This document shows positions 1-62,302 of a stretch of 64,000 nucleotides of DNA, piece by piece; position 1 is the stretch's first letter, and each line of letters begins with the position of its first letter. Source of the stretch: Heterodontus francisci (lineage: Eukaryota); assembly GCF_036365525.1 (NCBI RefSeq), contig NC_090387.1:88453691-88517690 (forward strand). The letters are read 5' to 3'. Below the pieces are notes generated by a model, which did no database searches, was not told the DNA's origin, and worked only from the letters and a program-made list of their open reading frames with translations. Made by a program: the position numbers and the translations under genes.

Positions 1-2246
1 ATTGCTAAGTCTCTTCAATCTGCCACACTTTAGCTCCTCCTTTAAGGCTGTCCATCAGCTCTGGCGATCACTGGCAACTGAATCCCACGACTTGTGATCA
101 ATGTCACAGGGCTTCATGTCGCGTTTGCAGACGTCTTTAAAGCGGAGACATGAACGGCCGTGGGTCTGATACCAGTGGCGAGCTCGCTGTACAATGTGTC
201 CTTGGGGATCCTGCCACCTTGAGGACTTTTGTGTTTGAGATATGGTCCTGCCACATGATGCCAAGGATTCCGTGGAGGCAGCGAAGATGGAATTAATTGA
301 GACGTCGCTCTTGGCTGACATATGTTGTCCAGGCCTCGCTGCCGTAGAGCAAGGTACTGAGGACACAGGCTTGATACACTTGGACTTTTCTGTTCCGTGT
401 CAGTGCGCCATTTTCCCACACTCTCTTGGCGAGTCTGGACATAGCTGTGGAAGCCTTTTCCATGTGCTTGTTGATTTCTGCATCGAGAGACAGGTTACTG
501 ATGATAGTTGAGCCCAGGTAGGAGAACTCTTGAACCACTTCCAGAGCATGGTCGCCGATATTGATGGATGGAGCATTTCTGACGTCCTGTCCCATGATTT
601 TCGTTTTCTTGAGGCTGATGGTTAGGCCAAATTCGTTGTAGGCAGCTGCAATCCTGTTGATGAGTCTCTGCAGACACTCTTCAGTGTGAGATGTTAATGC
701 AGCATCGTCAGCAAAGAGGAGTTCCCTGATGAGGACTTTCCATACTTTGGTCTTCGATCTTAGACGGGCAAGGTTGAACAACCTACCACCTGATCTTATG
801 TGGAGGAAAATTTCTTCTTCTGAAGACTTGAACGCTTGTGAGACCAGCAGAGAGAAGAAGATCCCAAACAGTGTAGGTGCGAGAACACAGCCCTGTTTCA
901 CGCCACTCAGGATAGGAAAGGGGTCTGATGAGGTGCCGCTATGCTGAATTGTGCCTTTCATATTTTCATGGAATGAGGTGATGATATTTAATAGCTTTGA
1001 TGGAAATCCGATCTTTTCTTGTAGTCTGAAGAGACCACGTCTGCTGACGAGGTCAAAGGCTTTGGTGAGATCAATGAAAACAACGTAGAGGGGCTTCTGT
1101 TATTTGCAGCATTTCTCCTGTAGCTGGTGAAGGGAGAACAGCATGTCAATGGTGGATCTCTCTGCTCGAAAGCCTCACTGTGCCTCAGGGTAGACATGCT
1201 CAGCCAGCTTCTGAACCCTGTTTAAAGAGACTCGAGCGAAGACTTTCCCCACTATGCTGAGCAGGGAGATTCCACGGTAGTGGTTGCAGTCAGCCTTGTT
1301 CTTCTGCAACTTCTCCTCGCACCCCTTCCCCTACACCCCCTCTCCTACCCTCTGCAGCCCCCTTCCCTGCTCCCACTCGCACCTCCTCCCCCCTGCACCC
1401 CCTTTCCCTACTGCACCCCCTTCCCTCAGCTCCTCCCACCGGCATCCACCTATCCCCGAGCAGGGGCCCTAACAACCCCACTGCCTAGTGGGCGTCTCGG
1501 GAGAGACCAAGGCTAATGGCGTAAACCATAGCAGAAAATACGGAGCAGAACCCCGAATGCGGTCATGTGTCATCTTTGGCATGTTTCTGGCAGTTCCTGC
1601 AGCCATACCCGTGCGAAACGTCGTGCTCTGCACTCATTTGGACCCCACCAGGAAGGCCGAGAGGGGGCTTTGGACGCTTGGACAACTCACAACCTCCATA
1701 CATCCGACAAGGCATTTGCCATGGAGAGGTCACTCCATAGCTGCCTCACAGCGACCAAAACAACATGGAAGGCAGCAGTTATGGGTTATAAGTCCAGCTC
1801 AATTGGTGTAGAGATTGGGCGCCACAGGTTGCCTTTGGCAGTGGGAGAGGTCATCGCATCTCACTGGACAGCTACTGCCCGCCTCAAACCGGGCAGCCCC
1901 CGGTGAGTAGGTTCTGTCCCACCACAGTCCACCTGCTTCAATGGGTGTTTGGAGTCAGGGTCATTTCCCGAAAAGTGGACTGCAGCACCACACCAAAGAG
2001 CATGACAGAAAAAGGAAAGAAGGTACCAGCCCTTCGTTTTGCAAGCTGGAACGTCAGAACTATGTGTCCTGGCCTGTGGGAAGATCTTACACAAATCAAC
2101 GATTCTCAGAATACTGCCATCATTAACAACGAGCTCAGTAAACTAAATGTGGACATTGCAGCACTTCAGGAGACACGCCTCCCTGCGAGCGGATCTCTAA
2201 GAGAGCAAGACTACACCTTCTTCTGGCAGGGTAGGGATCCTGAAGA
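1..2246 (-). mobile_element. RTE-clade LINE copy 1, decayed, with inverted 5' segment
   Basis: Minus 1-~1305 encodes RT (GVKQGCVLAPTLF, LLFADDAAL). Plus ~1310-2246 carries the C-rich 5' UTR and the APE start (ALRFASWNVRT..DIAALQETRL..FWQGRDPE). The 3' end lies outside the window. Confidence 0.9.
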
Positions 2247-5942: not shown

Positions 5943-6092
5943 TTATGCAATCTCGGATTCTCCAATTGGCTTGGATATCTTGATCTCTGCATACTCCGCT
6001 CTCCTTTTCTTCTGTTCCCTTATCGCTGTCTTCTGGGAAGCAGTGAAATCCGGAGACGCGTAAGCCACTTGAACATCCGTCTCTTGCTTGTA
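5943..6092 (-). CDS. Gene A exon 7 (last; cytoplasmic): YKQETDVQVAYASPDFTASQKTAIREQKKRRAEYAEIKISKPIGESEIA*
   Basis: Acceptor ttattgttgcttccacAG, phase 0, 150 nt, TAA at 5943-5945; ITIM/ITSM-like VAYASP and AEYAEI. Confidence 0.8.
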   Translation of the reverse strand, partial: YKQETDVQVAYASPDFTASQKTAIREQKKRRAEYAEIKISKPIGESEIA

Positions 6093-6232
6093 CTGTGGAA
6101 GCAACAATAAACGATCATTCGCATATGTTACTCAAACTAAATGTTCCAGGCTGTTAATATACATTACTGAGAGCAGAGGCTAGTGCCGGAGCGGGCCTGG
6201 TTGGAATGAAATGTTTGATTTCTCGTTCGTAC

Positions 6233-6343
6233 CTGAGCATAGACGGTGCGCTCATCCTCACGTCTGGATTTCCCAGTTTTCCTGTGCGTGCTGATGTTGA
6301 GGACAGCGTAAGACGGACTCCCCGCCTCTCCTCCCAGCACGGT
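6233..6343 (-). CDS. Gene A exon 6 (cytoplasmic): TVLGGEAGSPSYAVLNISTHRKTGKSRREDERTVYAQ
   Basis: Acceptor cctctcctcAG, donor CAG|GTacga, 111 nt, phase 0-0; Tyr motifs SYAVL and TVYAQ. Confidence 0.8.
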
Positions 6344-7331
6344 CTGAGGAGAGGTTTTGGAGAAATATTAGCTGTATATCAAATCACAAAATCACAGGAC
6401 CACAAAAAAACTAATTGATTATGGATTTGGAATGTATAATCGGTGCAGGTCATAGCTGTAAATGTCATTGTCCGTGTGATAATTGTCATAAGAGGACAAC
6501 AGAGACAATTAATGCGCAGCTGGAGTCCGTCCCCTACACATTCAATCACAAGGCGTGTTATCAGAACCCATCCTGACGCACTGGGAAAAAGTCTGGCCCG
6601 TGTGTTATTGTGCGATACCGCACATCCATATTCTGACTTTGCTAATTTCAGAAAATACATATGACCTCAATGGTTCTGGGCCCCCAGGAAGGGATGGGTG
6701 TAAGGGATAAGGCATCTCTGTCAAGGCCAGCTCCAGTCAACACTCAGAAGTCTATGGGGATGTCCGCTAACAACATAATGGAGCTAGGTTATGCCACTTC
6801 ACGCGTTTGAGTAACTGTCCAACCCACACCGACAAGACACAGATATCACCATCAGTATCTGCGACAACTGGTGGGTTGCGTGAGTTCCAGTATCATTGTT
6901 GCCCTGATGGGCGACAAGATCTGAGGCGAGGAGGACACTAGGGAAACAGTGAATTTGGCAGTGTACGCTGCTTACTTCACCGTGAGCGCGAGCAGTTCTG
7001 GTGTTCCAGTAATACCGATATAACCATGGTGTAAATGTGCAATACATTGCAATCGGAGTACATTTCTCATTACATCATAGTGCAACTGACCTGCTCCTCG
7101 ACCTGGCCGGGTATATCCTCACTAATCTCTGTGCCTATTAGAAAACGAAATTGACATCAATGATCAACTTCATCATGAATTAGACGTGCGACATTACTTC
7201 CATCAGAGGTTATTCAACATTCTAGCAAAGTGACCAGACTCACCATCAGTAGCAAAGTCACATTCTATTCCACTGCTGGATGAAATAAGGTATATTGTAC
7301 AGCTGAATACCTCGTGTTACATTGCCACTAC

Positions 7332-7384
7332 CTGCTTCATGCTTTCTACCCTCGGGTTGCTGCCCTTCCCCGCAGAGTCCAACA
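7332..7384 (-). CDS. Gene A exon 5 (short cytoplasmic): VLDSAGKGSNPRVESMKQ
   Basis: AG/GT bounded, 53 nt, phase 1-0, which exactly bridges the TM exon (phase 1) to exon 6 (phase 0). The polypyrimidine tract is weak. Confidence 0.65.
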
Positions 7385-7672
7385 CTAGCGGCATTTAGTG
7401 AGTTCACATCATCACCTTCAGTTATTGTAAAGCACGAAAACATTGTTAAGTTTATTCAAACGATGGGAAATCATTCTAGCGGGTATAATGCGTTTTAGAT
7501 CCTGCCTCCTTCATAATGCTGGGCCCCAGGAGGACAATCTCTGTGTGTGCAATATACAGTGCTCTGGAAATTGAGATCCCAATTTGGACCATTAAGCTGC
7601 CCGCTGCCGCAGCGTTCAATTGCAACTAGACGATAAAAGTCAATTCTGAACCAGGATCGTGTCACATCTTAC

Positions 7673-7786
7673 CTTCAATTCTGCTTAATTTGCATCGCTT
7701 GATAATAATTACCAGCAGCAAAATTATTAACCCGCCTGCTGCACATCCATAAACAATGGGGTAGAGGGAAGAACGGATACCATTAC
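7673..7786 (-). CDS. Gene A exon 4 (transmembrane): GNGIRSSLYPIVYGCAAGGLIILLLVIIIKRCKLSRIE
   Basis: Acceptor gccttttAG, donor GAAG|GTaaga, 114 nt, phase 1-1; hydrophobic stretch followed by KR stop-transfer; no charged TM residue. Confidence 0.85.
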
Positions 7787-8329
7787 CTAAAAGGCGTAGA
7801 GAAAATTGAATGTTCTTACTTCCTAGAGGAAACAATGTTAAATAATTAAGCAACGTCAGATAACAGACAGCACCGACAAATGCCAAATCATCAACTCTCA
7901 CGGAGGTACTAAGGAGACTCATTTTTTTTTCATTCTTAGACCATACTGCAGCAACATTAAAGGGCTAAAGTGCAAGACAGTGTAAACTACATATGAACTA
8001 TCCATGTGTTATAATATAAGACCTGAAATCTGATTAACTGTCATATTTAACTCAATGATTATTCAGCTTTTTTCATGATGTGTGCGTAACCTTATGCATG
8101 GCTGCCTCTGTCTGTCTCTCTCCGTGTATCGTTGTGCCGAAAAGAAATTCACCCAAATGAATTAAAAATAAATGCTGCGCCAAATGCAGCAAAAAGAATG
8201 ATGGGAACACTAATCCAAAACTAGCAGAAGCGAGTTCCTGTGGATCATATTGACCATCAAGTACATCATGCAAGACCCAATCCACCTTCAACGCACAGCT
8301 ATATGATTCTGAGGGATCTGCTAGGTTTC

Positions 8330-9790
8330 AGGTCTGGTGCTTGTCACAACATTGGATTTCGGGATGTTGTTGGAGGAATGCAAATATTGCACCTTTGTTT
8401 AAACAAGGGGAAAAGGGCAAAGCCAGCAACTACAGGCCACTCAGCCTTATGTGGTGCAGAAACGTTAAAAGCAACAATCAAGGAAAAAATAATTGGCATT
8501 TGGGAAAGGTATGGGCTCGTAAGTGAAAGTGAGCACAGATTGTGAAAAGACAAATCGGTTTGACTAACTTGATTAAGCTATTTGATTAACTGAGAGGGTC
8601 GATGTAAGTAGTATAGTTGATCTATGCATGGATTTTCTAAAGGCGTTTGACCAAATACCACAAATTCGATTTTTTCGCAAAATTAAAGCCCATGGGATTA
8701 AGCAGACAGTGACACAATGGATTCAAACTTGACTAAGCGACGGTGAACCGAAAGTGGTGACCAACGATTTTTTTTCAGAATGGAGGGAGGTATCCAGTGG
8801 TGTTCCCAATGATCGATAGGAAGACTACTGCTCTTTTGATATATATTAACGACGTGGACTTGGGTACCTAGGCCATAATGTCAAAATTTCAGATAACCCA
8901 ACAACCCAGAAAATTACTAAACAATGAGGGGGATTGTCACAAAAATTAGGCGGACAGAGACAGCTTGGTAAATTGGGCAGACTTGTGGCAAATGAAATAT
9001 GAGGCAGAAAAAATGTGAAGTGGTGTGTATTGCTAGGCAGAATGTGAAGAAGTAGTATGAAGAAAGGTACTGAATCTTAATGGTTTGCTACATCAGAGAA
9101 AGGAGGTTTACATACTCAGATAGTTCATAGTGGCATGACAAGTTGAGAAGGCTGTTATAAATTAAGGTATTCTTGGTTTTATTAATAGAGGAAGAGTTCA
9201 AAACAAAGGAAGTCATGTTCAGCACTTATGGAACATTCGCTAGATCTCATCTGAAGTGTTGCATCAAAATCTGGACCCCACACTTTAGGAAGGATTTTAA
9301 GGCTTTAGAGAGGGTGTGGAAGATATTTGCTAGAATAGTACCAGGTTCGTGGAATTTTAATTATGTGGAGAGACTGGAGTAGCTAGGCGCGTTCTCCATA
9401 GAGTACAGAAGGTAAAGAATAGATTTTAAAGAGGTGTTCAAAATCTTAGACAGTTTTGATAGAGTAAATAAGAAGTTTTCCAGTTGCTGAAGGGTCAGTA
9501 ACCCGAGACCACAGATTGAAAGTGCTTGTCATGCAAGTAGAGGACACATAGGAAAAAAAAAAGAAAAGGTTTTTGCACAACGAGTTGATGTGATCTGGAA
9601 TGCACTACCTGAAAACATGACAGAAATAAATGCAATAGTAACATTGAAAAGGGAAGTGGACAACTGCTTGGAGGGAGAACATTTACAGGGGTATGAGGAA
9701 AGAGCGGGACTAATTGCATAGCTCTACGAAAAAAATGCACATTTGCACGATGGACCGAATGACTTGTTTCTGTGCTGTATGATTCAATGA
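8330..9790 (+). mobile_element. Decayed CR1 LINE (RT and 3' tail), intronic
   Basis: WRNANIAPLFKQGEKGKASNYRPLSL, WTPHFRKDFKALERV. Confidence 0.8.
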
Positions 9791-10389
9791 TATTGACCTT
9801 TGGTAGTAATTCTCCCAGTTCCTATTTACTCACTGCACGAGTCTTCAGCTTATTCCTGAGGCAGAAGATAAATGTCCTGACAGCTAAAGTAGCGTGCTTA
9901 CATGACATGGATTCATGCCCCATCCTTCACCAAAATTTAGCTAATCCAAATGCTCTCTCCACGTGTACACGGTCTAGCTTAAGTATATCCACCCGAAGTC
10001 AATGCCTTTCTAAAGTAGAAATCATGATAACTAAAGATTTTTAAACTAGGTGTTAACCTATTGGTTCTCCTCTAAACGTTTTCCCAATATCTCAATATCT
10101 CTCACTATATAAGGAAACCATAACTGGACAGGGTTGTAGGTGAGGGCCGACCAAGGACAAGGGCAGTATAGCACTCTTCTATCGATTTTCCGTTGCTATA
10201 CATGCCAATGCTCTACTTTTGGCTACAGCCTCACGACAGTGATAGTGGCCGTTTCCGTGCACAATAACACCTAGGTCCCTTTCCCTTTGAACTTAGATTA
10301 CTTCAGAGCTCGGCACACTATGCACATGCTTGTCATTAGCCTTACCCACGTATATTACACGACCGATATCTACGTTAGATAAGAACATA

Positions 10390-12300
10390 CAAACAGACGA
10401 ATTATGAGCAGGAATAGGCCACTCGGCGCCTTGAGCTGATCATGGCTGATCTGATCGTAACCTCAGCTCCACAGTCCCGCCTACTTCCGATACCTTTCAC
10501 CTCCTTGCTTAACAAGAATTTATCTAGCTCTGCCTTAAAATATTTGAAAACTCTACTTCCAATGCTTTTTGAGGAAGAAAGTTCCAAAGACTCACGACCC
10601 TCTGAAAGAAAAAGAAAAGATCGCCTCATCCCTGGCTTAAATGGGCGACTCCTTATTTTTAAACAGTGACCACCTAATTCTACATTCTCCCACAAGAGGA
10701 AACATCCTTTCCACATCCACCCTGTCAATACCCCTCAGGAGCTTAAATGTTTCCATCAGGCCACCTCCTACCCTTCTAAACCCCAGCGGATACACGCCTA
10801 GCCTGTCCAACCTTTCCTCATAAGACAACACGCCCATTCCAGATAACTGCTTCCAATGTATTTACATATTCCCTTAAATAAGGGGACCAATAATGTATAC
10901 AGTACTCCAGATGTTGTCTCACCACTACCCTGTATAGCTGAAGCATAACCTCCCTACTCTTGCATTCAATTCCCCTCACAATAAATGATAAACTTCTATT
11001 AACTCTCCTAATTACTTGCTGTATCTGCATACTAACCTTTTGTGATTCATGCATTAGGACACCCAGATCCCTCAGCATCTCAGAGCTCCGCAATTTTTCA
11101 CCATTTAGATAATGCATCTTATTTATTCTTCCCGCCAAAATGGGCAATTTCACATTTTCCCACATTACACTCTATTTGCCAGATCTTTGCCCACTCACTT
11201 AACCTATCTATATCTCTTTGTAGGCTCCTTATTTACTTTTCACAACTTACCATCCTATCTACCCTTGTATGATCAGCACATTTTGCAACCATACCTTCGG
11301 GCCCTTCATCCAAGTTATTGATTTAAGTTCTAAAAAGTTGAGGCCCCAGCACTGATCCCTGTGGCACACCATTCTTTACATCTTGCCAATCAGAAAATGA
11401 CCCATTTATGCCTACTCTCTGTTTCCGATTAGCTAGCCAATTTTCTATCCAGCCCATACACCATTTGTTTTTATTTCCTGCAATGACCTCTGACGTGGCA
11501 CCTGATCAAATGTCTTATGGTAATCTAAGTACAGTACATCCATTGGTTCCCCTTTATCCACAGCACATGTTACTTCTTCAAAGAACTCCAATAAATTGTT
11601 TAGAAATGATTTCCCTTTCACAAAACCACGTTGACGCTACATGATCACCTTGATTTTTTCTAAGTGCCCTGCTATAACATCTTTATTAAAAGCTTCCGAC
11701 ATTTTCCCTATGATAATTGTTAAATTAACTGGCCTGTAGTTTCCTGCTTTCTGTCTCCCCCCGCCCCCCTTTTTGAATAAAGGAGTTGCATTCGCTATTT
11801 TCCAATCTAATGGAGCGTTCCCCGAATCTAGGGAATGTTGGAAAATTAAAATCAACACATCAACTATTTCACGAGCGACTTGTTTTAAGAACTTAGGATG
11901 AAGTCCATCAGGACCCTGGGGCTTGTCAATCCGCAGCTTCAACAATTTGCTCAGTCCAATTTCGCTGGTGCAATTTTATTCAGTTCCTCCCTCCCTTTCA
12001 TTTCCTGATTTACAGCTGTTTTTGCAATGTTACTTGTATCCTCTATAGTGATGACCGATGCAAAATACCTCCTCAATTCATCGGCCAGCTCCTTATTTTC
12101 CATTCATAGTTCCCCAGATTCGATTTCTCTAGGACCAACGCTTTATAGGAACTCCTGTTATCCGTTTTTATATTTCTAGCAAGCTTTTTCTCGTATTTCC
12201 CTCCCCACCCATTGAATTTTTAGCCATTCTCTGCTGCTTTTTAAATTTTTTGTCCAATCTTCTAACCTGCTACCCATTTTTGCGCAATTATATGCTAATG
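10390..12300 (-). mobile_element. Decayed CR1 LINE (RT and 3' tail), intronic
   Basis: KPQGPDGLHP..WKIANATPLFKK..GNYRPVNL; HLEYCIHYWSPY; SYEERLDRLG. Confidence 0.85.
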
Positions 12301-12497
12301 AAATCTACCATATGCATGCCATTTCCCGATGGCATCTAGATCGGTCCATAATCTATTTCGGTTTGGTGCTCAACGGTTCTGACACCAGCAAAGACATGCG
12401 TACCATCAGTGATCATGTGGACCCCGCAAGTTAGTGACAGCACCTATATCTAACTCAGGTACAGTTCAGAGGAGTATTGAAAATCTGCGTCCCTTAC

Positions 12498-12779
12498 CTT
12501 GGCCAGGAACCGTGCAACTGTCGTTGGCTGGCAATCCGAGAGAGACATGTGAAACCTGGCAGGTATAAACTGACCCGCTCTTCACAGGTTTAAGGACACT
12601 GAAAACTTGATACAATCCCTCCTGGTTCCGTCTTTCCGTGATGTTTATCCCAGATGTAATCTCGACATCATTTTTATACCAAGTGAGGTTGAACTCCTTC
12701 GGGAAGAACCTAGTTGTTGTGCAGAGGAGTGTGAAGGACGGAGAAGACGGACAGAAAATCGTCACTGGTGTTGGCGGCA
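12498..12779 (-). CDS. Gene A exon 3: Ig C1-set domain
   Basis: (V)PPTPVTIFC..TLLCTTTRFFPKEFNLTWYKN..GLYQVFSVL..YTCQVSHVSL, matching C1 CxxxxFxP..W..YxCxVxHxxL. Acceptor ttcctAG, donor AG|GTaagg, 282 nt, phase 1-1. Confidence 0.93.
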
Positions 12780-15518
12780 CTAGGAATGAGTTAAAGGGAA
12801 TGAGTTAAAATCAGTATTCGTGCATTAGATTAGAAAACCAAAGAATGGTTGCCGAAAAGGGAGAACATTTAACAGCTGGAGTATTCCTTTAATAAAGGAA
12901 CGTCATCGCCCTAGTAAGGCTATCTTGGTTGAAGCAGGAGATGCCAAGGTTTCTTTCATTCTTGTCTGCATCCAACACTGGCTGAGGGAAGACCCCACAT
13001 CTGTGCACTGAAACCAATGTAAGACCCAATTAAACAGAACCCGCATGTGCGATGTCTTAAACTCCCTGCAAATGCTTCACTGTCATTTGCACCTTCGTTT
13101 CGTTTATTACTTCATGAGATGTAGTCGTCGTTGGCAAGGCCAACATTAATTGCCCATCCATAATTACCCTTGAGAAGGCGATAGTGAGCCCCTTCTTGAA
13201 CGTCAGCAGTCCGTATGCTGAATATACATCCACAGTGCTGTTAGGGGGAAGTTCCAAGATTATGACACAGTGATAGTGAAGGGTCGGGGATAGAGGTTTT
13301 AAATAGTTTTCAGCTATATCAATAGGGAGACATTAAATTCTGTGATATAGTTTCACAGACTGCGTAGCAGTTATGAAAACAACATAAAAAAAAATATTGC
13401 CTCTATTCCAGTCTTGCAGTGACCCGGGGAGAGCCGTCCGCCCTAACCCTAACTTGATACATTTCTGCGATCACGTGTAGGTCATGACTCCAGTTTGCTC
13501 TCAGCGTGAATAAACTCTAATCTCCGTCACAGTTCACATATTTCGAATAAAATAGCTCGAAAGGCCAAATCAACAGAAAAAAAAAACAACTCCATCCGAA
13601 TATTCTGCATTTGGAGATATCCGTGTCCATCATTCCTTGCGATGAAGTAAATTCCAGAGACTCCGCTCCGGGCTGAAGCCTTGCTGATGCAATGTAAGCC
13701 CTTCGTGAGTGACCTATCTGTTTCGCACTTCTGGGCTGAGCGTCGCTGAAATTGACCGTTTCACTGTTTCTTGTCTAATTGATTCCCTATTTGCTTTCTG
13801 GTTAGATTACAGAATTTAAAGAGAGAAAGACTGATTACCGGACGCACCCCCAAACTCTCTACCTCAGTCCAGTCCCCTGCCCTTGCGCCGTATTCTTTAA
13901 TATTTTCCCTCCAGTATTAATCTAATTCCCTTAAGACCCCTGTGTTTGATATCTTTTAATAGCCCTTGTGCCGTTCTATGCCACGCTCTCACAATCGGTT
14001 GAGTTAAAAAATAATCTTCTTTCGACAGATAAACCTAAATTCATGCGCCTACATCATGAGTAACGGCATTCAAATCCCTTCTACTGGATCTGCCTTTAAC
14101 CTTTGTTGATCTCCAGGATTTAAGCCCGATATCACCAAGTAAATGCATCTCGCCCCTTCTCCTTGGCATCATTATAGTAGCCCAATCTGTCGGCACTACT
14201 ACAACTGTGGCATAGCCAAGGACTTTCAGATAGGGAAACGTAGGATTCAATGCCTCTCTCAACCACATTATCTAGATGGCTTCATTTCTGGGACAATAGA
14301 TACTATTTAAACATTGTATAAAATCCAAACCGTGTCTATTTTCCACAAAGAGAAACAGAAATGCTCAGGCTGCGGATCAAATCACCACGAGAACAATTTC
14401 TCGTGAAAAGTCCCTCACCTTCTCTCTCCGGTTCTTGGAGTCCGTCGTTAAAATACCAGCGAGAGTCATAGGGCAGGGCTTACACTGTAACCAACATGAA
14501 GTTTTAGACCGAAACGAGGTGTCTGAAACGTGTCAAGAGAAATAAGTACTGGCGTTCAACAATCGCCAACATATCTCCATCGAAAATGCCTCAAACTCTG
14601 CACTGAATGTCGGCTGTAAATACAAAGCGATCTCTGGTTCCACAATCCGGGTACATTCACTGCAGTCTTTTGGTATATCTGAGGAAGCGGATTACATTAT
14701 ATTTCTGCTGGACCCGTCGACTCCAGTGCAAACCTTAGTTTTGGATCAGCGCCTAGTGCAAATAACCGTTTCAGTTACTGCTCATTCCACCTCTCCTACA
14801 GACACATTGTCTCTTTCCATTTAAGCCTGTTCGGCTTATCAATAATTACTCATTTAGCAACGCTCCGAAGCCTCACAAAGCTTCTAAAAACTTTAATTTC
14901 CTTTTAGATTTCTCCAATTTCCATCAGACCGACGAGGTCACAGTTTGAAATTAGAATTGCTGGAGTAATTATTACCTTTTTCTCCATTCTCTCCAACCGC
15001 TAACTACTCCACTTCACCTCTTAATATCCCCATTTACAATCTACTCGTTTATTTTCTGGAACTGACCTTCATTCGAATAACCGCAGCTCATTTCCGCTCC
15101 ACTCTCTTGTCGTTCAGTGAAAGCTATAAACTCATTAGCCACTAACTGTTTTACCTGAAATATGTCACCCCGAGTTCAAAAAGTACTTTATCCATAAAGT
15201 TTCCCAAATATGTGACAGCGATCACATTCCAAGTCTAACAGCACTTCCGTTTGCATCGCAAACAGCGTTCAAAATAATAGTTCGATCCACTAAACACAAT
15301 CACTGTCTCCCCCCGTGAGAAAGCTTCACATGACCTGCTTATTAACGGCCTTTCAATTGACTTTGCTTCACTAACATGACTTCCATTCCGTTCATCTCTG
15401 ATTTGAATCATGTCTTGCTGTCTTGCACCGGGATTATGGACAATGCTTCGGCGTCACTGCTGCGATCATGCTGGAGTCTCAGACTGAGTTGGGCCAACAG
15501 ATATTCCGATAACACGCG

Positions 15519-15600
15519 GGTGGGGGTGGTGGGGGGGGGGGGGGGGGTGGGGGGGGGTGTGTGGGGGGGGGGGGGGGAGGGGGGGGAGGGAGGGGTGGCG
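15519..15600 (+). repeat. Poly-G / G-rich low-complexity tract
   Basis: Multiple long G runs in the V-C1 intron of gene A. Confidence 0.85.
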
Positions 15601-16239
15601 GAGAAGGGGAAGTTTATATATGCCTAACAATGGAAATCAACTCGATCACTGTAAATAAATCCATCAAGTGTAAATTACAATAAGTCCAAATATAATCTCC
15701 CATTAGTGTGAATCGAATAATCAATGTATGCACTATCTGTGTAGCAAATAAAATCTATGAATGCAAATGTAATCTATTAGTCCTGTAAATTAAATCGATT
15801 TGTGTAAATACAATTGTTATGGAAGCAAAATGTTTATCATTGAGAAACTAAAATCTATCAGCATAAATAAAATCTGTTACCAGTAAATATGCCAATTACG
15901 TTATGCAGCCGAATATTGTTACCCCTTTCCCTGCTATCGCTTTGTTTTTCTTTTCCTTGCCCCTTTTCTCTGTGTTATACTTGTGAACAGTTACTGACAA
16001 ACCCTTTTTTGTATCCTAGGTGTGATTCAATAGACAATCAGGAAGATACATTGTACTCCGGTCGCTTGGAGATCGGCTCCTCAGTGATAGAGGATTGAAT
16101 TTATGTGATTCCAAGGAGGTCGGTATTCAGTCTAATGCAGTTTTCTGTTATTCGATAAATATTTAACACTAAATGAAATCCAGAACATTCATAATTTTCT
16201 ATTTTTAAATATGTTATATAAAGGGCTACATAAGTGGCG

Positions 16240-16830
16240 TGGTTACTACAGCAGGTTAGAGGTTGGATTTTCTGCAGCAAGTGACTTAGCTGTTGACTCC
16301 CAAAGCCTGTCCGCCACCTACAAGTCAGGAGTCTGATGGAATACTCTCCACTTGTCTCGATGAGTATAGGTGCAACAATACTGAACACGACCCCCCCCCC
16401 CAAATTCTACTTGATGACACTCCATCCACTATCGTAAGCACCCACTCTCTTCGTCAGATGTGCACTATAGTTGCATTATGTGCCATCCACAAGATGCACT
16501 GCAGCACTCGCCAAAGCTTCTTCGACAACACGTCCCAAGTCCGTGAACTTATCAGCTAGAACGACAAGGTGACAGCCACATAAAAACGCCACCAACTTCG
16601 ACTTACCTCCAATGCCATCTGCATCACAGTTGGACATAGACTACCGTGTCTTCATCATCAGGGGATCAAAATCCTGGAACTCCATACACGAGAGCACTGT
16701 GCCAGCACTTTCTCCGTATAGAATTCAGCCATTGAAGGGACCCCAACACATTTTCAAGGACAAATTGGGATAAGCAATAAATGCTGGCCGTGCCAGCGAT
16801 GCTCATCTTCCGAGAATTAATTAAAAAATA
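16240..16830 (+). mobile_element. CR1-group LINE 3' fragment (second family)
   Basis: Similar to 60600-61190, including the tail aataaatgctggcc..gccagcgatgc. Confidence 0.7.
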
Positions 16831-17095
16831 AGTACATGATTAGGGAGAAGAGCACAATGATTGACTGAAGTCAGTCATTCTGAATTCCACGGTCTGGTAA
16901 ATGGTGCGGCTTTGTGTGAACAGACAGGATTCACTACAAATCAAGGGGAATCAACGCCACAGATCGTAACAGAGAGAAAAATGCCTTGCAGTTCCTTTGT
17001 TAAATAATCTCTAATAGAGACCTGTATAATTTTATGCTGGTCCATTATCCCCCCCACCCCACCTCTCCCCAGCTCCCCACCCCAGTGTCACTCAC

Positions 17096-17416
17096 CGTGT
17101 ACAATCAGCTCAGTTCCATTCCCATTGGAAATCATTCCTTTCAAGTCTCTCACGCTGCAATAATAGACTCCCGAGTCCTGGAAAGTCACATTCAGCAGGT
17201 GGAACTCGGCAGATCCTTGCTTGAAAGGTGTCATTATTTTCCTTTTGTCTGTCTCCGAATCTAAAGTCCCGTCCTGGCCGTTTCTCCGCCAATAAACAGC
17301 CACCCATGCGTTAGGACGGAAAAGTGGGATAGAACAATAAATGGACACATTTTCACCTTTCACTGGAGTCAGCCGGGCGGGGAACTGAAGCACTGAGAGA
17401 GGAGTCTCTTTCGCAG
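17096..17416 (-). CDS. Gene A exon 2: VJ-type Ig V-set domain (NCR3/NKp30- or SIRP-like)
   Basis: VSIYC..VYWRR..FHLLNVTFQDSGVYYC..NGNGTELIVH, with a J-like GxG G strand in the same exon. Acceptor ttctgacAG, donor CG|GTgagt, 321 nt, phase 1-1. Confidence 0.93.
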
Positions 17417-17568
17417 CTGTCAGAAATAAATACAAAGACGTATAAGCAGAAATAATGATTAGGAAGATGGAAAGGGAGGACGTAATGCGTAAGATATAGA
17501 ACGAATAAACTGGACAACAGAATTATTATGCAATTCCTTAACTATCAGATAGGCCTTAATTTCTGCAC

Positions 17569-17623
17569 CTGTGTAAATAATGTCCAGGGCTGAGAGGTAC
17601 CACAACACATCCAGCACAAGCAT
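17569..17623 (-). CDS. Gene A exon 1: probable leader MLVLDVLWYLSALDIIYT
   Basis: ATG followed by 55 nt ending AG|GTgcag in phase 1, 152-nt intron to the V exon; same layout as gene B. Two Asp residues make it an imperfect signal peptide. Confidence 0.65.
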
Positions 17624-17664
17624 TCTGAGCAATGTCGATGAAATCGATTAGTCCTGCCGTAAAT

Positions 17665-17940
17665 CAGTAGGAAGTGATGAAAGGCACGGGGACGGAAAGA
17701 TTTGAAGACAATCGGGCATTGAACGTGTTGAAATATGGAGCACCACAAGATAGCTGACGCTACAACTTCAATGGACTGGTTTCACTTTTACGTCAGAGCT
17801 GAGAACGCACAGTGGAAGTTGAAGCCACCCACATAACGTGTTAAGATGAATACGGAACATTTTTGCATCATGCGAAAGTTTCCGAATTGATGCAGTTCTT
17901 GACTAATTGCAAACTTGACCAATTTGTACGGGGACTTTCA
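17665..17940 (-). promoter_or_regulatory. Putative proximal promoter of gene A with IRF-E, ETS and kB-like motifs
   Basis: AAAAGTGAAACC (minus, 17778-17789) fits the IRF element; AGGAAGTG near 17669; GGGACTTTCA at 17931-17940 is one mismatch from the kB site GGGACTTTCC. Short motifs only. Confidence 0.3.
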
Positions 17941-24957: not shown

Positions 24958-26371
24958 AAGGATAGCAAGGATAATCCAGGAAATTATCGGCTGGTGAGCC
25001 TTACATCAGTGGTAGGGAAATTATTAGAGAGGGTTCTTCGGGACAGGATTTACTCCCATTTGGAAACAAATGAACTTATTCGCGATAGGCAGCATGGTTT
25101 TGTGAAGGGGATGTAGTGTCTCATTAATTTGATTGAGTTTTTTGAGGAAGTGACGAAGATGATTGATGAAGGAAGGGCAGTGGATGTTATCTATATGAAC
25201 TTCAGTAAAGCCTTTGACAAGGTCCCTCATGGCAGACTGGTACAAAAGGTGAAGTCACACGGGATCAGAGGTGAGCTGGCAAAATGGATACAGAACTGGC
25301 TCTGTCATAGAAGACAGAGGGTAGCAGTGGAAGGGTGCTTTTCTGAATGGAGGGTTGTGACTAATGATGTTCTGCAGGGATCAGTGCTGGGGTGTTCGCT
25401 GTTTGTAGTATATATAAATGATTTGGAGGAAAATGCAGCTGGTCTGATGAGTAAATTTGTGGACGACACAAAGGTTGCAGGAGTTGTGGATAGTGATGAG
25501 GATTGTCAGAGGGTAGCGCAGGATATAGATCGGTTGGAGACTTGGGCAGAGAAGTGGAAGAAGGAGTTTAATCCGGACAAATGTGAGGTAATGCATTTTG
25601 GAAGGTCTAATGCAGGTGGGAAGTATACAGTAAATGGCAGGTCCCTTAGGAATATTGACAAGCAGAGAGATCTGGGCGTACAGGTCCACAGGTCACTGAA
25701 AGGGGCAACGCAGGTGGATAAGGTAGTCAAGAAGGCATATGGCATGCTTGCCTTCATCGTTCGGGGCATAGAGTATAAAAATTGGCAAGTCATGCTGCAG
25801 CTGTGCAGAGCCTTAGTTAGGCCACACTTAGAATATTGCGTGCAGTTCTGGTCCCCACACTACCAGAAGGATGTGGAGGCTTAGGAAAGGGTACAGAAGT
25901 GGTTTACCAGGATGTTGCCTGGTCTGGAGGGCATTAGCTATGAGGAGAGCTTGGATAAACTCAGATTGTTTTCACTGGAACGCTTGAGGTGGAGGGGCGA
26001 CATGATAGAGGTTTACAAAGTTATAAGTGGCATGGACAGAGTGGATAGTCAGAAGCTTTTTCCAGGGTGGAAGAGTCAGTTACTAGGTTTAAGGTGCGAG
26101 GGGCAATGTTTAGATGGGATGTGCGAGACAAGTTCTTTATACAGAGGGTTGTGAGTGCCTGGAACGTGCTGCCGGGGGAGGTGGTGGAAGCAGGTATGAT
26201 AGCAACGTTTAAGACACATCTTGACAAATACATGAATAGGCTGGGAATAGAGGGATACAGTCACCAGAAGTGCAGAAGGTTTTAATTTAGACAGGCATCA
26301 CGATTGGCGCCGGCTTGGAGGGCCGAATTGCCTGTTCCTGCGCTGTACTGTTTTTTGTTCTTTTGTTCTTT

Positions 26372-41691: not shown

Positions 41692-44600
41692 TTCTTTTTT
41701 TGGCCTACTTGTCTCGAGAGACAATAGGTAAGTGCCTGGAGGTGGTCAGTGGTTTATGGAGCACTGCCTGGTGTGTCTATAAAGGCCAATTCTAGAGTGA
41801 CAGACTCTTCTACGGGCGCTGCAGATAAAATTGTTTGTCGGAGCTGTGACACAGTTGGCTCACTTCTGTATTTTTTCCTGCCAACTGCGAAGACTCTTGG
41901 ACTCACCACTCTTACGCACCCCCCCCGTTATGGCTGTCTGCCAGCTCTGGCAATCACTGGCGACTGACTCCCACCACGAGTGGTCAATGTTGCAGGACTT
42001 CATATCACGTTTGCAGACGTCTTTAAAGCGGAGACAAAGACAGCCAGTGGGTTTGATACCAGTGACGAGCTGCCTGTACAATGCGTCCTTGGAGATCCCT
42101 ATGGCCCACATGGTCAAGCCATCTCAAGCGCCGTTGGCTCAGTAGGGTGGATATACTGGGGATGTTGGCTGCATCGAGGACTTCTGCTTTCAAGATACGG
42201 TCCTGCCACCTGTAGCCAAGGCTTCTCCGGAGGCAGTGAAGATGGAATTGGCTGAGATGTTGCTCTTGACTGACATACGTTGTCCAGGCCTTTCTGCCAA
42301 AGAGCAAAGTCGTTTTTAGTTTTAGAGTTACAGTACTGAAACAGGCCCTTAGGCCCACCGAGTCTATGCCAACCATCAACCACCCATTTATACTAATCCT
42401 ACACTAATTCCATATTGCTACCACATCCCCACCTGTCCCTATATTTCCCTACCACCTAATTTTTCTAGGGGCAATTTATAATGGCCAATTAACCTATCAA
42501 ACTGCAAGTCTTTGGCATGTGGGAGAAAGCCAGAGCACCCGGAGGAAACCCACGCAGACACAGGGAGAACTTGCAAACTCCACACAGGCAGTACCCAGAA
42601 TTGAACCCGGGTCGCTGGAGCTGTGAGGCTGTGATGCTAACCACTGCACCACTGTGCCGCCCACAGGACACAGGCTTGAAACACTCCTATTTTTGTGTTC
42701 CGTGTCAATGCGCCATTTTCCTACACCCTCTTGGCCAGTCTGGACATAGCAGCAGAAGCCATTCCCATGTGCTTGTTGACTTCTGCATCGGGAGACAGGT
42801 TACTGGTGATAGTTGAGCCTAGGTAGGTGAACTCTTGAACCACTTCCAGAGGATGGTCGCCGATATTGATGGATGGAGTATTTCTGACGTCCTGTCCCAT
42901 GATGTTCGTTTTCTTGAGGCTGATGGTTAGGCCAAATTCGTTGCAGGCAGCTGCAATCCTGTCGATGAGTCTCTGCAGACACTCTTCTGTGTGGGATGTT
43001 AATGCAGCATCGTCAGCAAAGAGGAGTTCCCCGATGAGGACTTTCCGTACTTTGATCTTCACTGTAAGATGGGCAAGGTTGAACAAACTGCCTTCTGATC
43101 TTGTGTGGAGGAAAATTCCTTCTTCTGAAGACTTGAACGCATGTGAGAGCAACAGTGAGAAGAAGATCCCAAACAGTGTAGGTGCGAGAATACAGCCCTG
43201 TTTCACGCAACTCAGAATAGGAAAGGGGTCTGATGAGGCACCACTATACTGAATTGTGCCTTTCATATTGTCATGGAATGAGGTGATGATACTTAGTAGC
43301 TTTGGTGGACATCCAATCTTTGCTAATTGTCTGAAGAGAGCACGTCTGCTGATGAGGTCAAAGGCTTTGGTGAGATCTATGAAAGCAGCATAGAGGGGCA
43401 TCTGTTATTTGTGGCATTTCTCATGTAGCTGGCGAAGGGAGAACAGCATCTCAGTGGTGGAGCTCTCTGCTCGAAAGCCGCACTGTGCCTCAGGGTAGAC
43501 ATGTTCAGCCGGCTTCTGGAGTCTGTTTAAAATGACTCGAGCAAAGACTTTCCCCACTATGTTGAGCAGGGAGATTCTTTGGTCGTTGTTGCAGTCACAG
43601 TGTTCACCTCTGATGTTTCTGGTGTCGGAGGCCAGCTGAATACGACTGCATAGGTATTGCCAGTAGTCATTTGCACAGAGCCTGGTTGTTCTTTGTGCAG
43701 CAATTCTGGCTACTTTAAGTGCTACGGCTGTTACCTCGTTGGGGGCTTTCTTGTAGTTCAACCGTGCAGTGCGATTAGCAGCTATGACAGGTTCCAGCTC
43801 TTGAAAGTGAGATTGAAATCAGTCTGCATTCTTCTTCACGTTTGCCAAAGGTGGCCATTGATGAGTCATAGATGTGGGCCCACTTCGTCTCTGCATCCCC
43901 TGCAGGAGTGCTTTGAAGCGCTTTTTCAAGTGAATTTAAAAATTTGTGTAAAAGCTGTGGATAAGAAATTCTGTTAGTGTTGATGCACGGGCGGCCCTTC
44001 TGCTTGGAGTGATGTAGCATCTTTGGTTTGAATCTAACTTTGCTGCACACCAGGGAGTGGTCATTGTCGCAGTCTGCATTGTGGAAGCTGCGTGTAATTT
44101 GGACATTGTTTATAGAGGCTCACCTTGTGACGATGGGGTCCAGCTGGTGCCAACGACATGATCTTGGGTGTCTCCATGAAACCTGATCACAGGGTTTAGT
44201 ATGAAAGAACGATTTGGTGATGCAGAGGTTGTGATAGGTACACAACTCCAGCAGTCTCTGTTCATTCTCCTTCATCCTTCCTATGCCATAGTGCCCAAGG
44301 CAGGAGGGCCATGAGTCATGGTCGGCCCCAACCCTCACGTTAAAGTCCCACAGCAGGAACAAACGTTTGGTATTAGGATTGCTACGAACGATATTATGGA
44401 GTTCCTCATAGAAGTGGTCTTTAACTTCAGGTGAGGAGCAGAGTGTTGGAGCATAGATGCTGAGTAGGTGTACTGGACCAGAGGCGGTGAGCAGTTGGAT
44501 GGACCGTATGCATTCCAAGCCATTTGAAGTTGGCTCTATCATGCTGAGCAAAGCGTTTCTGATGATGGAGCCCACTCTTTGCTGTCTTGGTTCTTCAGGA

Positions 44601-57412: not shown

Positions 57413-57605
57413 TATTCTAGATTCCCAATAAATCTACTGAAAAACCAAACGAAAAAAAAAGTCAAAACTTGTTCGCTTAGCAATCCGACGGACTGAACTT
57501 TTTAAATAAAAAGCTTACCTTATCAACACACTAGAGTCCTTTTTTTTTGGTTAGAGGAGGAGGGTGGATGGGAGACACTACACGTGTAGTGTCTCGGGTA
57601 CTGCC

Positions 57606-62050: not shown

Positions 62051-62102
62051 ATGCTGAGAGCCTTGCTTCCTTACATGGTGTTTCTGGCAATCAGTTGTCC
62101 AG
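62051..62102 (+). CDS. Gene B exon 1: leader MLRALLPYMVFLAISCP
   Basis: aagATG, hydrophobic core, donor AG|GTaaat in phase 1; 200-nt pyrimidine-rich intron. Confidence 0.85.
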
Positions 62103-62302
62103 GTAAATTTATTTTGTATCAACGCTCTCTCATTTCTTAAATTGACGAATATCATTTAATGTTCTCTTTTAGCTCTTCATGTTACTTTCCGCTTATTTTT
62201 CATTATTTCTTTTCTACTTCTGAACTTTCTGCCTGTTTGTCAACTGGACAATTTAAATTGATGTTTCTTTGTTTAATGCTGCGTTTAATACTTTTTCGAC
62301 AG

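What the first reader, a model, noticed from the sequence alone, without database searches (positions are those of the whole stretch)
5943..17623. Complete non-rearranging VJ-C1 receptor with an inhibitory-type tail
Seen: seven GT-AG exons with compatible phases give 1086 nt (361 aa) as L-V(J)-C1-TM-cyt. The V exon carries its own J-like strand (YYC..NGNGTELIV) and no RSS is evident beside it. Known: a VJ domain plus C1 is the Ig light chain/TCR architecture and is also found in SIRPs and tapasin, while NKp30 has a VJ domain ending GNGTRLVV but no C1. Inference: a germline-encoded, TCR-chain-shaped inhibitory receptor in a probable cartilaginous fish, relevant to the pre-RAG ancestor of antigen receptors. 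The short tail exons are invisible to the ORF track.
Basis: partly seen in the sequence, partly recalled or inferred. Interest (0 to 1): 0.85.

Follow-up and report, generated by a model that had tools for sequence, protein, structure and literature searches.

The report
Horn shark germline VJ-C1 receptor gene
This is a real, transcribed horn shark gene for a cell-surface receptor built like one antibody light chain or T-cell-receptor chain that never rearranges. It is already in RefSeq and is one of many copies of a receptor family found across sharks, rays and chimaeras, so it is solid but not new.

Summary
The gene is real and lies on the minus strand. It has seven GT-AG exons running from the ATG at 17623 to the stop ending at 5943.

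- **Transcript evidence:** RNA contigs confirm the leader-V and V-C1 junctions exactly and support the C1-TM junction.
- **Size:** The product has 358 aa (1077 nt), not 361 aa. It is 100% identical to RefSeq XP_067905927.1, "tapasin-related protein-like isoform X2" of Heterodontus francisci, a misnomer.
- **Domains:** The V exon carries its own J strand and has no recombination signal sequence (RSS) beside it. The next exon is a clear C1-set domain, and the modelled ectodomain best matches antibody light chains.
- **Family:** About 65 proteins from 14 cartilaginous-fish genera share the layout VJ-C1-TM-four-tyrosine tail, all under inconsistent automatic names. The closest solved relatives are UrIg2, B7-H3 and SIRP-alpha.
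- **Tail:** Relatives carry strict ITIM/ITSM motifs. This copy keeps all four conserved tyrosines, but none fits a strict ITIM or ITSM. "Inhibitory-type" therefore holds by homology only.
- **Copy-specific features:** It has two cysteines in C1 that no aligned relative has. RefSeq also lists isoforms without the TM exon.

The idea that germline V-C1 receptors relate to the antigen-receptor ancestor is already published for SIRP, NKp30 and UrIg. This scan had already found the same family several times on this chromosome. Verdict: new member of a known kind, of moderate interest.

The parts
17569..17725 (-). Exon 1: 5'UTR, seen to at least 17725, plus the split leader. The ATG is at 17623-17621. 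The exon codes MLVLDVLWYLSALDIIYT plus one base and ends in phase 1.
   Evidence: The sequence was read. RNA contig X1 record 7 covers 17569-17725, and the joint 17569|17416 appears in runs X1 and X2.
17096..17416 (-). Exon 2: a VJ-type V domain of 321 nt, phase 1-1. It has Cys46, Trp61, DSGVYYC and a built-in J strand (NGNGTELIVH). No RSS lies beside it.
   Evidence: Pfam V-set scores 7.9e-10. RNA contigs cover the whole exon and both of its joints. The RSS scan was negative.
15067..15385 (-). Alternative first exon inside intron 2, with the ATG at 15091 and the donor after 15067. It gives RefSeq isoform X5, which has no leader and no V. A second donor lies after 14419.
   Evidence: RNA contigs of run X1 show the joints 15067|12779 and 14419|12779 at lower depth. 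P0176 begins MSCGYSNE and then continues into C1.
12498..12779 (-). Exon 3: a C1-set domain of 282 nt, phase 1-1. It runs VPPTP...LLCTTT..LTWYKN..YTCQVSH and carries the copy-specific Cys135 and Cys214.
   Evidence: Pfam C1-set scores 5.9e-14. The best PDB match is UrIg2 at 1.1e-14. The joint 17096|12779 is seen in X1 and X2. Each of the two cysteines occurs in 1 of 45 aligned relatives.
7673..7786 (-). Exon 4: stalk, an uncharged transmembrane helix (LYPIVYGCAAGGLIILLLVIII) and the KRCK stop-transfer, 114 nt, phase 1-1. Isoform X1 uses an alternative acceptor at 7822. Isoforms X3 and X4 skip the exon.
   Evidence: The sequence was read. The 111-letter loose end beyond the C1 donor in run X1 reverse-complements to 7782-7753, inside this exon. 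The isoforms are aligned. AF2 models a helix over residues 222-255.
7091..7134 (-). Exon 5: 44 nt coding (G)TEISEDIPGQVEEQ, passing from phase 1 to phase 0.
   Evidence: AG and GT sites are present. The exon is identical to the RefSeq model and collinear with the paralogue P0151, which reads GTEISEDIPGQFEEQ.
6233..6343 (-). Exon 6: 111 nt carrying tail tyrosines Y284 (PSYAVL) and Y307 (TVYAQ|Y).
5943..6092 (-). Exon 7, coding part: 150 nt including the TAA. It carries Y320 (VAYASP) and Y343 (AEYAEI). The 3'UTR continues below 5943; the first ATTAAA is at 5711.

Best explanation
This is an intact, transcribed type I membrane receptor of a large cartilaginous-fish family of germline (non-rearranging) VJ-C1 receptors. 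The family's nearest solved relatives are UrIg2, B7-H3 and SIRP-alpha.

**Likely mechanism.** The N-terminal V domain, with its own J strand and three N-glycan sequons, would bind a cell-surface ligand. The single C1 domain acts as a stalk. The uncharged membrane helix pairs with no ITAM adaptor. Four conserved tail tyrosines (Y284, Y307, Y320, Y343, in two pairs 23 residues apart) would be phosphorylated and recruit SH2 proteins.

**Inhibitory signalling.** In most paralogues these sites are strict ITIM/ITSM motifs, which suggests inhibitory signalling through SHP-type phosphatases. In this copy every motif is one residue off the strict pattern, so its inhibitory signal is probably weakened or redirected.

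**Isoforms.** Annotated alternative splicing that drops the TM exon would give soluble forms.

**Shown:** gene structure, transcription of the leader, V, C1 and TM exons, domain types, absence of an RSS, family membership and motif state.

**Inferred:** ligand binding, phosphorylation, phosphatase recruitment and the soluble forms.
For: **Transcript and gene model**
- Spliced RNA contigs join leader, V and C1, and read on into the TM exon.
- The 358-aa model equals RefSeq XP_067905927.1.

**Domains**
- Pfam gives V-set and C1-set.
- No RSS lies by the V exon.
- The AF2 ectodomain has pLDDT above 90. The top 50 Foldseek matches are almost all antibody light chains, aligned over about 220 columns.

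**Relatives**
- By sequence against the PDB: UrIg2 6e-15, CD276 8.8e-14, SIRP-alpha 8.7e-13.
- With the family profile: UrIg2 9e-36. SIRP-alpha scores 4e-31, collinear over V plus the first C1.
- The family profile finds 65 strong hits, all chondrichthyan, followed by a drop from 6e-38 to 6e-18.
- The gene sits inside a clade of 19 elasmobranch rows with SH-aLRT support of 100.

**Tail and membrane span**
- The tail aligns with paralogues P0151, P0157 and P0160 without internal gaps.
- Paralogues carry LSYAAL, LTYASL, VEYSEI, TEYAxI and similar motifs; this gene has none that is strict.
- The membrane span has no charged residue.

**Isoforms**
- RefSeq lists isoforms lacking the TM exon.
Against: - No ligand, cell type, phosphorylation or phosphatase binding was tested.
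- The tail junctions were not seen in reads I laid.
- All RNA evidence comes from one sample of one study, whose tissue is hidden.
- The strict ITIM/ITSM patterns are all missed, so "inhibitory" may be wrong for this copy.
- The two extra cysteines could change how the protein assembles.
- The TM-less and V-less isoforms are annotation models. Only the 15067|12779 joint was seen in RNA.
Confidence: 0.7

Rival explanations
1. It is a shark NKp30 (NCR3) family gene in the strict sense. On this reading it is a member of the MHC-linked NCR3 group described from nurse shark, and its V domain binds a B7-H6-like ligand.
For:
- NCBI's pipeline names the V-only isoform of a Pristis family member "natural cytotoxicity triggering receptor 3-like".
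- Earlier notes of this scan report B7-H6-like genes in this genome (not tested here).
- Shark NCR3 is reported as a divergent multigene family. I know this from the abstract of Kinlein 2021, recalled from memory; the paper is not held.
Against: - NKp30 has a single V domain; this protein has V plus C1.
- The published MHC gene tables of white shark and catshark place the genes labelled NCR3 next to AIF1, PRRC2A and DDAH2. No such gene lies in this window.
- Earlier notes put the horn shark MHC on another piece.
- The catshark relatives found here carry GeneIDs far from those of the MHC chromosome.
- No protein with a curated NCR3 name appeared in the family searches.
- NKp30 did not reach the top 60 PDB matches for the V exon or for the V profile.
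Confidence: 0.12
2. It is a direct relic of the pre-RAG antigen-receptor ancestor. On this reading it is a single-copy-type lineage, like UrIg or UrIg2, that kept the ancestral VJ-C1 chain and is specially informative about the gene the RAG transposon invaded.
For: - It has the split leader, a single VJ exon and a C1 exon with antigen-receptor-like phases.
- UrIg2 is the best solved sequence match.
- The fold matches light chains.
Against: - It is one of dozens of fast-duplicating paralogues with species-specific expansions and no clean one-to-one orthologue. That is the pattern of a birth-and-death innate receptor family, not of a conserved relic.
- UrIg and UrIg2 have three or more C domains, and lie respectively in the MHC and in the IgH/TCR-alpha-delta gene complex (PMC12227049). 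This gene has one C domain and no such neighbours in the window.
- The data cannot tell descent from a precursor apart from descent from an antigen receptor. The same caveat was made for SIRP (PMC2785349).
Confidence: 0.08
3. It is a decaying or neutralised copy. It is still transcribed and has an open frame, but it has lost its signalling function, since every ITIM/ITSM is broken. It would act at most as a decoy, or be on the way to becoming a pseudogene.
For: - None of the tail motifs is strict, whereas the neighbouring paralogue has three strict ITIMs.
- Pro at +3 of Y320 is rare: 3 of 20 filled positions in the alignment, against 14 with L, V or I.
- A conserved aromatic residue (41 of 45 relatives) is replaced by Cys214.
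Against: - All seven exons are open with canonical splice sites.
- All four tyrosines are kept.
- P at -2 of Y1 and A at -2 of Y4 are shared with the Heptranchias relatives, so they are old, tolerated states rather than fresh damage.
- The V-C1 transcript has the highest contig depth among the forms seen.
- The ectodomain folds with high confidence.
Confidence: 0.1

Closest known systems
Cartilaginous-fish VJ-C1 receptors in RefSeq, all under automatic names: [quoted passage not shown], "tapasin-related protein-like", "NCR3LG1-like", "CD276 homolog", "Ig lambda-1 light chain-like"
   Same: The exon layout and domain order are the same. So are the VPPTP start of C1, the YxCxVSH motif, the uncharged TM and the four aligned tail tyrosines. 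Overall identity is 63-64% to the horn shark neighbour XP_067905922 and to Heptranchias XP_067853508.
   Different: No motif is a strict ITIM or ITSM. Cys135 and Cys214 are unique to this copy. There is no clean one-to-one orthologue.
SIRP-alpha (human; PDB 2wng; Hatherley 2009, PMC2785349)
   Same: Both have a germline V domain followed by C1-set domains and a single-pass TM. Both tails carry four tyrosines; for SIRP-alpha that part is from my memory. The family profile aligns collinearly with SIRP-alpha d1-d2 at 4e-31. The same argument linking such receptors to antigen-receptor evolution was made for SIRP.
   Different: SIRP-alpha has two C1 domains where this protein has one. Orthology, synteny and CD47 binding were not tested. 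This copy lacks strict ITIMs.
UrIg / UrIg2 (Flajnik 2023; Flajnik 2025, PMC12227049; PDB 9dmx)
   Same: Both have a non-rearranging VJ exon with a split leader followed by C1-type domains. UrIg2 is the best solved sequence match.
   Different: UrIg and UrIg2 have three to eleven C domains, and lie respectively in the MHC and in the IgH/TCR-alpha-delta gene complex. This gene has one C domain, a tyrosine-motif tail and many paralogues.
NKp30 / NCR3, including the shark NCR3 family (Kinlein 2021, which I could not read)
   Same: The V domain is germline VJ-type with a GNGT.L.V strand. One family member's V-only isoform is auto-named NCR3-like.
   Different: NKp30 has no C1 domain. Mammalian NKp30 has a charged TM (established knowledge). 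NCR3 lies in MHC class III next to AIF1 and PRRC2A in white shark and catshark, and that context is not seen here.
Ig light chains and TCR chains
   Same: Same V-J-C1 order, split leader and exon phases. The top 50 structural matches are almost all light chains.
   Different: Here V and J are fused in the germline, with no RSS. The protein also has its own TM and signalling tail.

Membership tests
Chondrichthyan VJ-C1-TM-Tyr-tail receptor family (no curated name) | A single exon encodes a V domain with a built-in J strand (G.G..L.V), preceded by a split leader | tested here: met
   The G117, G119 and V124 columns are at least 90% conserved in 45 relatives.
Chondrichthyan VJ-C1-TM-Tyr-tail receptor family (no curated name) | One C1-set domain that starts VPPTP and carries Y.C.VSH | tested here: met
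   Pfam C1-set 5.9e-14. See the alignments.
Chondrichthyan VJ-C1-TM-Tyr-tail receptor family (no curated name) | Falls inside the family in a tree and in a profile search | tested here: met
   Clade of 19 rows with SH-aLRT support of 100. Profile score 6e-137, while non-family proteins score 6e-18 or weaker.
Chondrichthyan VJ-C1-TM-Tyr-tail receptor family (no curated name) | Tail with four aligned tyrosines that form strict ITIM/ITSM motifs | tested here: inconclusive
   All four tyrosines are kept, but none of the motifs is strict. Paralogues have one to three strict motifs.
NKp30 / NCR3 | Ectodomain made of a single VJ-type V domain | tested here: not met
   The V domain is followed by a C1 domain in the same transcript.
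NKp30 / NCR3 | Location in MHC class III next to AIF1, PRRC2A and DDAH2 | tested here: inconclusive
   None of these genes lies in the 64-kb window. Earlier notes place the MHC on another piece.
NKp30 / NCR3 | V domain groups with NCR3 V domains in a tree | not tested
   No NCR3 reference sequence could be obtained from the tools. NKp30 was not among the 60 best PDB matches.
SIRP | V-C1-C1 ectodomain | tested here: not met
   There is only one C1 exon between V and TM.
SIRP | Sequence similarity that is collinear over V and the first C1 | tested here: met
   2wng scores 8.7e-13 with the single sequence and 4.4e-31 with the family profile, aligning positions 24-215 to chain residues 3-205.
SIRP | Orthology or synteny with the SIRP cluster, and CD47 binding | not testable with these tools
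   No flanking genome and no binding assay were available.
UrIg / UrIg2 | VJ domain followed by three or more C domains | tested here: not met
   One C1 exon here. UrIg2 has 9-11 C domains.
Rearranging antigen receptors (IgL, TCR) | RSS after V, and separate J segments | tested here: not met
   No heptamer or nonamer lies in 16800-17700. J is fused to V in the exon.
Tapasin / TAPBPR (the RefSeq name) | Tapasin N-terminal domain ahead of the Ig domains | tested here: not met
   Pfam finds only Ig-type families: V-set on the V exon, C1-set on the C1 exon, and none on the two tail exons scanned. The name is an automatic best-hit label.

The most novel reading that the evidence does not exclude
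The family as a whole may be an undescribed, chondrichthyan-wide sister group of SIRP and UrIg that keeps the simplest antigen-receptor-like chain (L-VJ-C1-TM). Within it, this copy may have changed function. It has lost every strict ITIM/ITSM and gained a pair of cysteines at the membrane-proximal end of C1. Those cysteines could form an extra intradomain bond or a covalent, TCR-like dimer.
Probability: 0.15. Interest if true: 0.6.

Novelty: new member of a known kind. Interest (0 to 1): 0.35.

Why it matters
Germline V-C1 receptors are the class of gene from which the rearranging antigen receptors are thought to have arisen. A well-annotated, expressed family of them in sharks, rays and chimaeras is useful material for that question and for studying paired-receptor evolution.

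This one gene adds little on its own. It is already in RefSeq, has many paralogues, and its special features (degenerate tail motifs, two extra cysteines, annotated TM-less isoforms) are modest.

The practical value of this check is threefold. It gives a corrected gene model. It shows that the RefSeq name "tapasin-related" is a misnomer. It shows that "inhibitory" should not be assumed for this copy.

Tried and rejected

- A homodimer test of the ectodomain (residues 19-222, two copies) gave no verdict, with scores of 0.00. This is no evidence either way.
Flanking genes, synteny and the chromosomal place of relatives could therefore not be fetched.
- The model coordinates are not exposed, so I could not measure the Cys135-Cys214 distance.

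**Papers not held**
- Kinlein 2021 (PMC8273117), Flajnik 2012 (PMC3709836), Ohta & Flajnik 2015 (PMC4594805), Flajnik 2023 (PMC10530332) and Ohta 2019 (PMC6761025) could not be read.
- I therefore could not check whether the eight published nurse shark NCR3 subtypes include VJ-C1 forms.

**Searches that were not decisive**
- PDB searches with the V exon and with a V-only profile were swamped by multi-Ig proteins and antibodies, and did not show NKp30.
- The protein atlas gave only generic V-set clusters.
- A word-indexed search restricted to the V region reached only close relatives.
- The search for "PRARP" returned only unrelated papers.

**Readings considered and rejected**
- UrIg membership is rejected on the number of C domains.
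- Tapasin relationship is rejected on domain content.

**Handling of the spliced model**
- I did not type the joined model or send it to any search tool. Searches used exon references or protein ids that tools had returned.
- I joined the exons only inside local scripts, to check phases and to compare the product with returned proteins.

Full report
**What is there.** The V exon with the J-like strand lies on the minus strand. Reading the sequence and checking phases in a script gives seven exons:

| Exon | Coordinates | Length | Content |
|---|---|---|---|
| E1 | 17623-17569 | 55 nt | split leader |
| E2 | 17416-17096 | 321 nt | VJ domain |
| E3 | 12779-12498 | 282 nt | C1 domain |
| E4 | 7786-7673 | 114 nt | stalk and transmembrane helix |
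| E5 | 7134-7091 | 44 nt | cytoplasmic |
| E6 | 6343-6233 | 111 nt | cytoplasmic |
| E7 | 6092-5943 | 150 nt | cytoplasmic, includes TAA |

All introns are GT-AG. The phases are 1-1-1-1-0-0, the arrangement typical of Ig-superfamily receptors. The coding sequence is 1077 nt (358 aa).

**Transcription.** The three runs that hold this stretch are listed only as "RNA?", but their contigs are spliced.
- One 648-nt contig (run X2) covers leader, V and C1, with joints 17569|17416 and 17096|12779. Both introns read GT..AG on the minus strand.
- A second run (X1) shows the same joints at higher depth and extends the 5'UTR to 17725.
- A 111-letter loose end beyond the C1 donor reverse-complements to the start of the TM exon.
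- Minor joints from 15067 and 14419 into the C1 acceptor mark an alternative first exon inside intron 2.
- All three runs come from one sample of one study, and its tissue is hidden.
- Only one read-laying run was allowed, limited to 6 kb, so I did not see the three tail junctions in reads.

**It is already annotated.** I searched exon by exon, by reference. The V exon scored against 1.84 billion representatives gave a set of shark proteins. A word-indexed search with one of them returned P0155. P0155 is identical over all 358 residues to my exon model. It is XP_067905927.1, "tapasin-related protein-like isoform X2" of Heterodontus francisci, on a 99.65-Mb chromosome.

RefSeq lists four more isoforms:
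- X1 (370 aa) uses a TM-exon acceptor 36 nt upstream, at 7822.
- X3 and X4 lack the TM exon.
- X5 starts at the internal exon seen in the RNA contigs and has neither leader nor V.

I did not type the joined model or send it to any search tool. Exons were joined only in local scripts.

**Domains.**
- Pfam gives V-set for E2 and C1-set (5.9e-14) for E3.
- The V domain has the canonical Cys46, Trp61, DSGVYYC and G117-x-G119-x-x-L-x-V.
- The C1 domain has Cys145, Trp159 and YTCQVSH.
- No RSS heptamer or nonamer lies within 16800-17700. J is fused to V in the exon and a GT donor follows directly.
- An AlphaFold2 model built on 45 relatives has pLDDT above 90 over both Ig domains, a helix over residues 222-255 and a disordered tail.
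- Its 50 best Foldseek matches are almost all antibody light chains, aligned over about 220 columns.

The "light-chain or TCR-chain shape" is therefore real.

**The family.** A profile of 45 relatives finds 65 strong hits, down to 6e-38. All are from cartilaginous fish: Heterodontus, Heptranchias, Scyliorhinus, Hemiscyllium, Chiloscyllium, Stegostoma, Carcharodon, Cetorhinus, Mustelus, Mobula, Hemitrygon, Pristis, Pristiophorus and Callorhinchus. The next score is 6e-18.

Their names are automatic and inconsistent: SIRP-like, tapasin-related-like, NCR3LG1-like, CD276 homolog, Ig lambda-like, H-2 class I-like. "Tapasin-related" is a misnomer, because no tapasin domain is present.

In a tree of 38 named members, the gene lies in a clade of 19 elasmobranch sequences with SH-aLRT support of 100. 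That clade is made of species-specific duplicates, and the gene has no clean one-to-one orthologue. The nearest sequences are Heptranchias XP_067853508 (64% overall, 77% in V) and the horn shark neighbour XP_067905922 (63%). This is the pattern of a birth-and-death innate receptor family.

This scan had already met the same family at about nine other places on this chromosome and on other pieces. My results agree with those notes.

**Relation to known families.** Against solved structures, by sequence:

| Query | UrIg2 (9dmx) | B7-H3 / CD276 | SIRP-alpha (2wng) |
|---|---|---|---|
| P0155 alone | 6e-15 | 8.8e-14 | 8.7e-13 |
| Family profile | 9e-36 | 7.1e-24 | 4.4e-31, collinear over V and the first C1 |

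- **NKp30:** it did not reach the 60 best matches for the V exon or a V profile. This is uninformative for a single-domain protein. One V-only isoform of a Pristis member is auto-named NCR3-like.
- **MHC linkage:** the published MHC gene tables of white shark and catshark place the genes labelled NCR3 between AIF1/PRRC2A and DDAH2 (Verissimo 2023 supplement). None of these genes is in the window, which otherwise holds mainly LINE fragments. Earlier notes put the horn shark MHC on another piece. The catshark relatives found here have GeneIDs far from those of the MHC chromosome. MHC linkage of this copy is therefore unlikely but not excluded.
- **UrIg / UrIg2:** they differ by having three to eleven C domains and by their genomic setting.
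- **Published idea:** the view that a germline V-C1 receptor is close to the antigen-receptor precursor was published for SIRP-alpha in 2009. That paper notes that descent from a precursor and descent from an antigen receptor cannot be told apart. The same idea was later developed for NKp30 and UrIg.

**The tail.** Four tyrosine positions align across the family without internal gaps. Their state in this gene and in its neighbouring paralogue:

| Tyrosine | Neighbour P0151 | This gene | Departure from the strict motif |
|---|---|---|---|
| Y284 | LSYAAL (ITIM) | PSYAVL | P at -2 |
| Y307 | TVYAQT | TVYAQY | Y at +3 |
| Y320 | LTYASL (ITIM) | VAYASP | P at +3 |
| Y343 | VEYSEI (ITIM) | AEYAEI | A at -2 |

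- Other members carry TEYAxI-type ITSM motifs.
- P at -2 of the first site and A at -2 of the last are shared with Heptranchias relatives, so they are old states.
- Pro at +3 of Y320 is rare: 3 of 20 filled positions in the alignment, against 14 with L, V or I.
- The tyrosines form two pairs 23 residues apart. From memory, that spacing is the kind used by tandem-SH2 phosphatases on SIRP-alpha and PD-1; I did not test this.
- The membrane span has no charged residue, so the protein does not look like an activating, adaptor-coupled form.

"Inhibitory-type" is thus a statement about the lineage. For this copy the inhibitory signal is probably weakened or redirected.

**Copy-specific features.**
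- Cys135, at the end of the C1 A strand, and Cys214, at the end of the G strand, each occur in 1 of 45 aligned relatives. Position 214 is otherwise Y, F or H in 41 of 45.
- By Ig topology both lie at the membrane-proximal end of C1. They could form an extra intradomain disulfide or interchain bonds.
- I could not measure the distance in the model. A homodimer job gave no verdict.

**Most likely mechanism.** It is a surface receptor. Its glycosylated VJ domain would bind an unknown cell-surface ligand. C1 would act as a stalk. The tail would signal through phosphotyrosines, ancestrally to SHP-type phosphatases. TM-skipped soluble forms are possible decoys. Structure, transcription, family membership and motif state are shown. 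Binding, phosphorylation and signalling are inferred.

**Verdict.** The architecture and the absence of rearrangement are right. The inhibitory tail holds by homology only. The novelty claim fails, because the gene is in RefSeq and belongs to a large family that this scan has met repeatedly. Nothing singles this copy out as closer to the pre-RAG ancestor than its relatives. The family still lacks a curated name. I could not find a paper describing it among those I could read, but I could not read the key shark NCR3 paper. A family-level study remains worthwhile.

Noticed in passing
window 62051-62614 (+): A second family gene begins here, on the strand opposite to the finding's gene and about 44 kb from its first exon. 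Its split leader is at 62051-62102 and its VJ exon at 62303-62614 (…YYCRVSHKEVANGTGTRLAVY). The donor is GT and the phases are 1-1. The rest of the gene lies beyond the window end. Its V domain belongs to a different subgroup, 34% identical to this gene's V and resembling Mobula XP_072135201.
   Followed up: partly
window 7785-7788 (-): The same AG|GT serves two roles in the RefSeq models. It is the acceptor of the TM exon in isoform X2. It is also the donor of a 36-nt mini-exon (7822-7787) in the TM-less isoform X3.
   Followed up: partly
window 14419-15385 (-): An alternative first exon lies inside intron 2, with the ATG at 15091 and donors after 15067 and 14419. RNA contigs show it spliced to the C1 acceptor. 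The product (RefSeq X5) has no signal peptide and no V domain, so it may be a transcriptional by-product.
   Followed up: partly
window 12498-12779 (-), residues 135 and 214: Two cysteines are unique to this gene among 45 relatives. One of them replaces a conserved aromatic residue at the end of the C1 G strand. They may form a new disulfide or an interchain link.
   Followed up: partly
window 10400-12000 (-), 296-1099 (-), 25117-25881 (+), 42724-44866 (-), 50588-51969 (-), 53592-57433 (-): Long open frames carrying LINE reverse-transcriptase and endonuclease-like sequences fill intron 3 and most of the intergenic space. The copy at 53592-57433 has frames of 655, 312 and 320 aa and looks nearly intact.
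   Followed up: no
P0215 (Pelodiscus sinensis) and P0216 (Megalops cyprinoides): These are weak relatives outside cartilaginous fish with a similar layout. The turtle protein runs L-VJ (FGSGTRLIV)-C-TM and ends in a TEYAAV ITSM. The tarpon protein has V-C1-Ig-TM and ITIM-like motifs. They could be used to root the family.
   Followed up: no
window 15470-15640: A G-rich/C-rich low-complexity tract lies in intron 2. It reads as poly-Gly on one strand and poly-Pro on the other. Read laying skipped it as a repeat.
   Followed up: no
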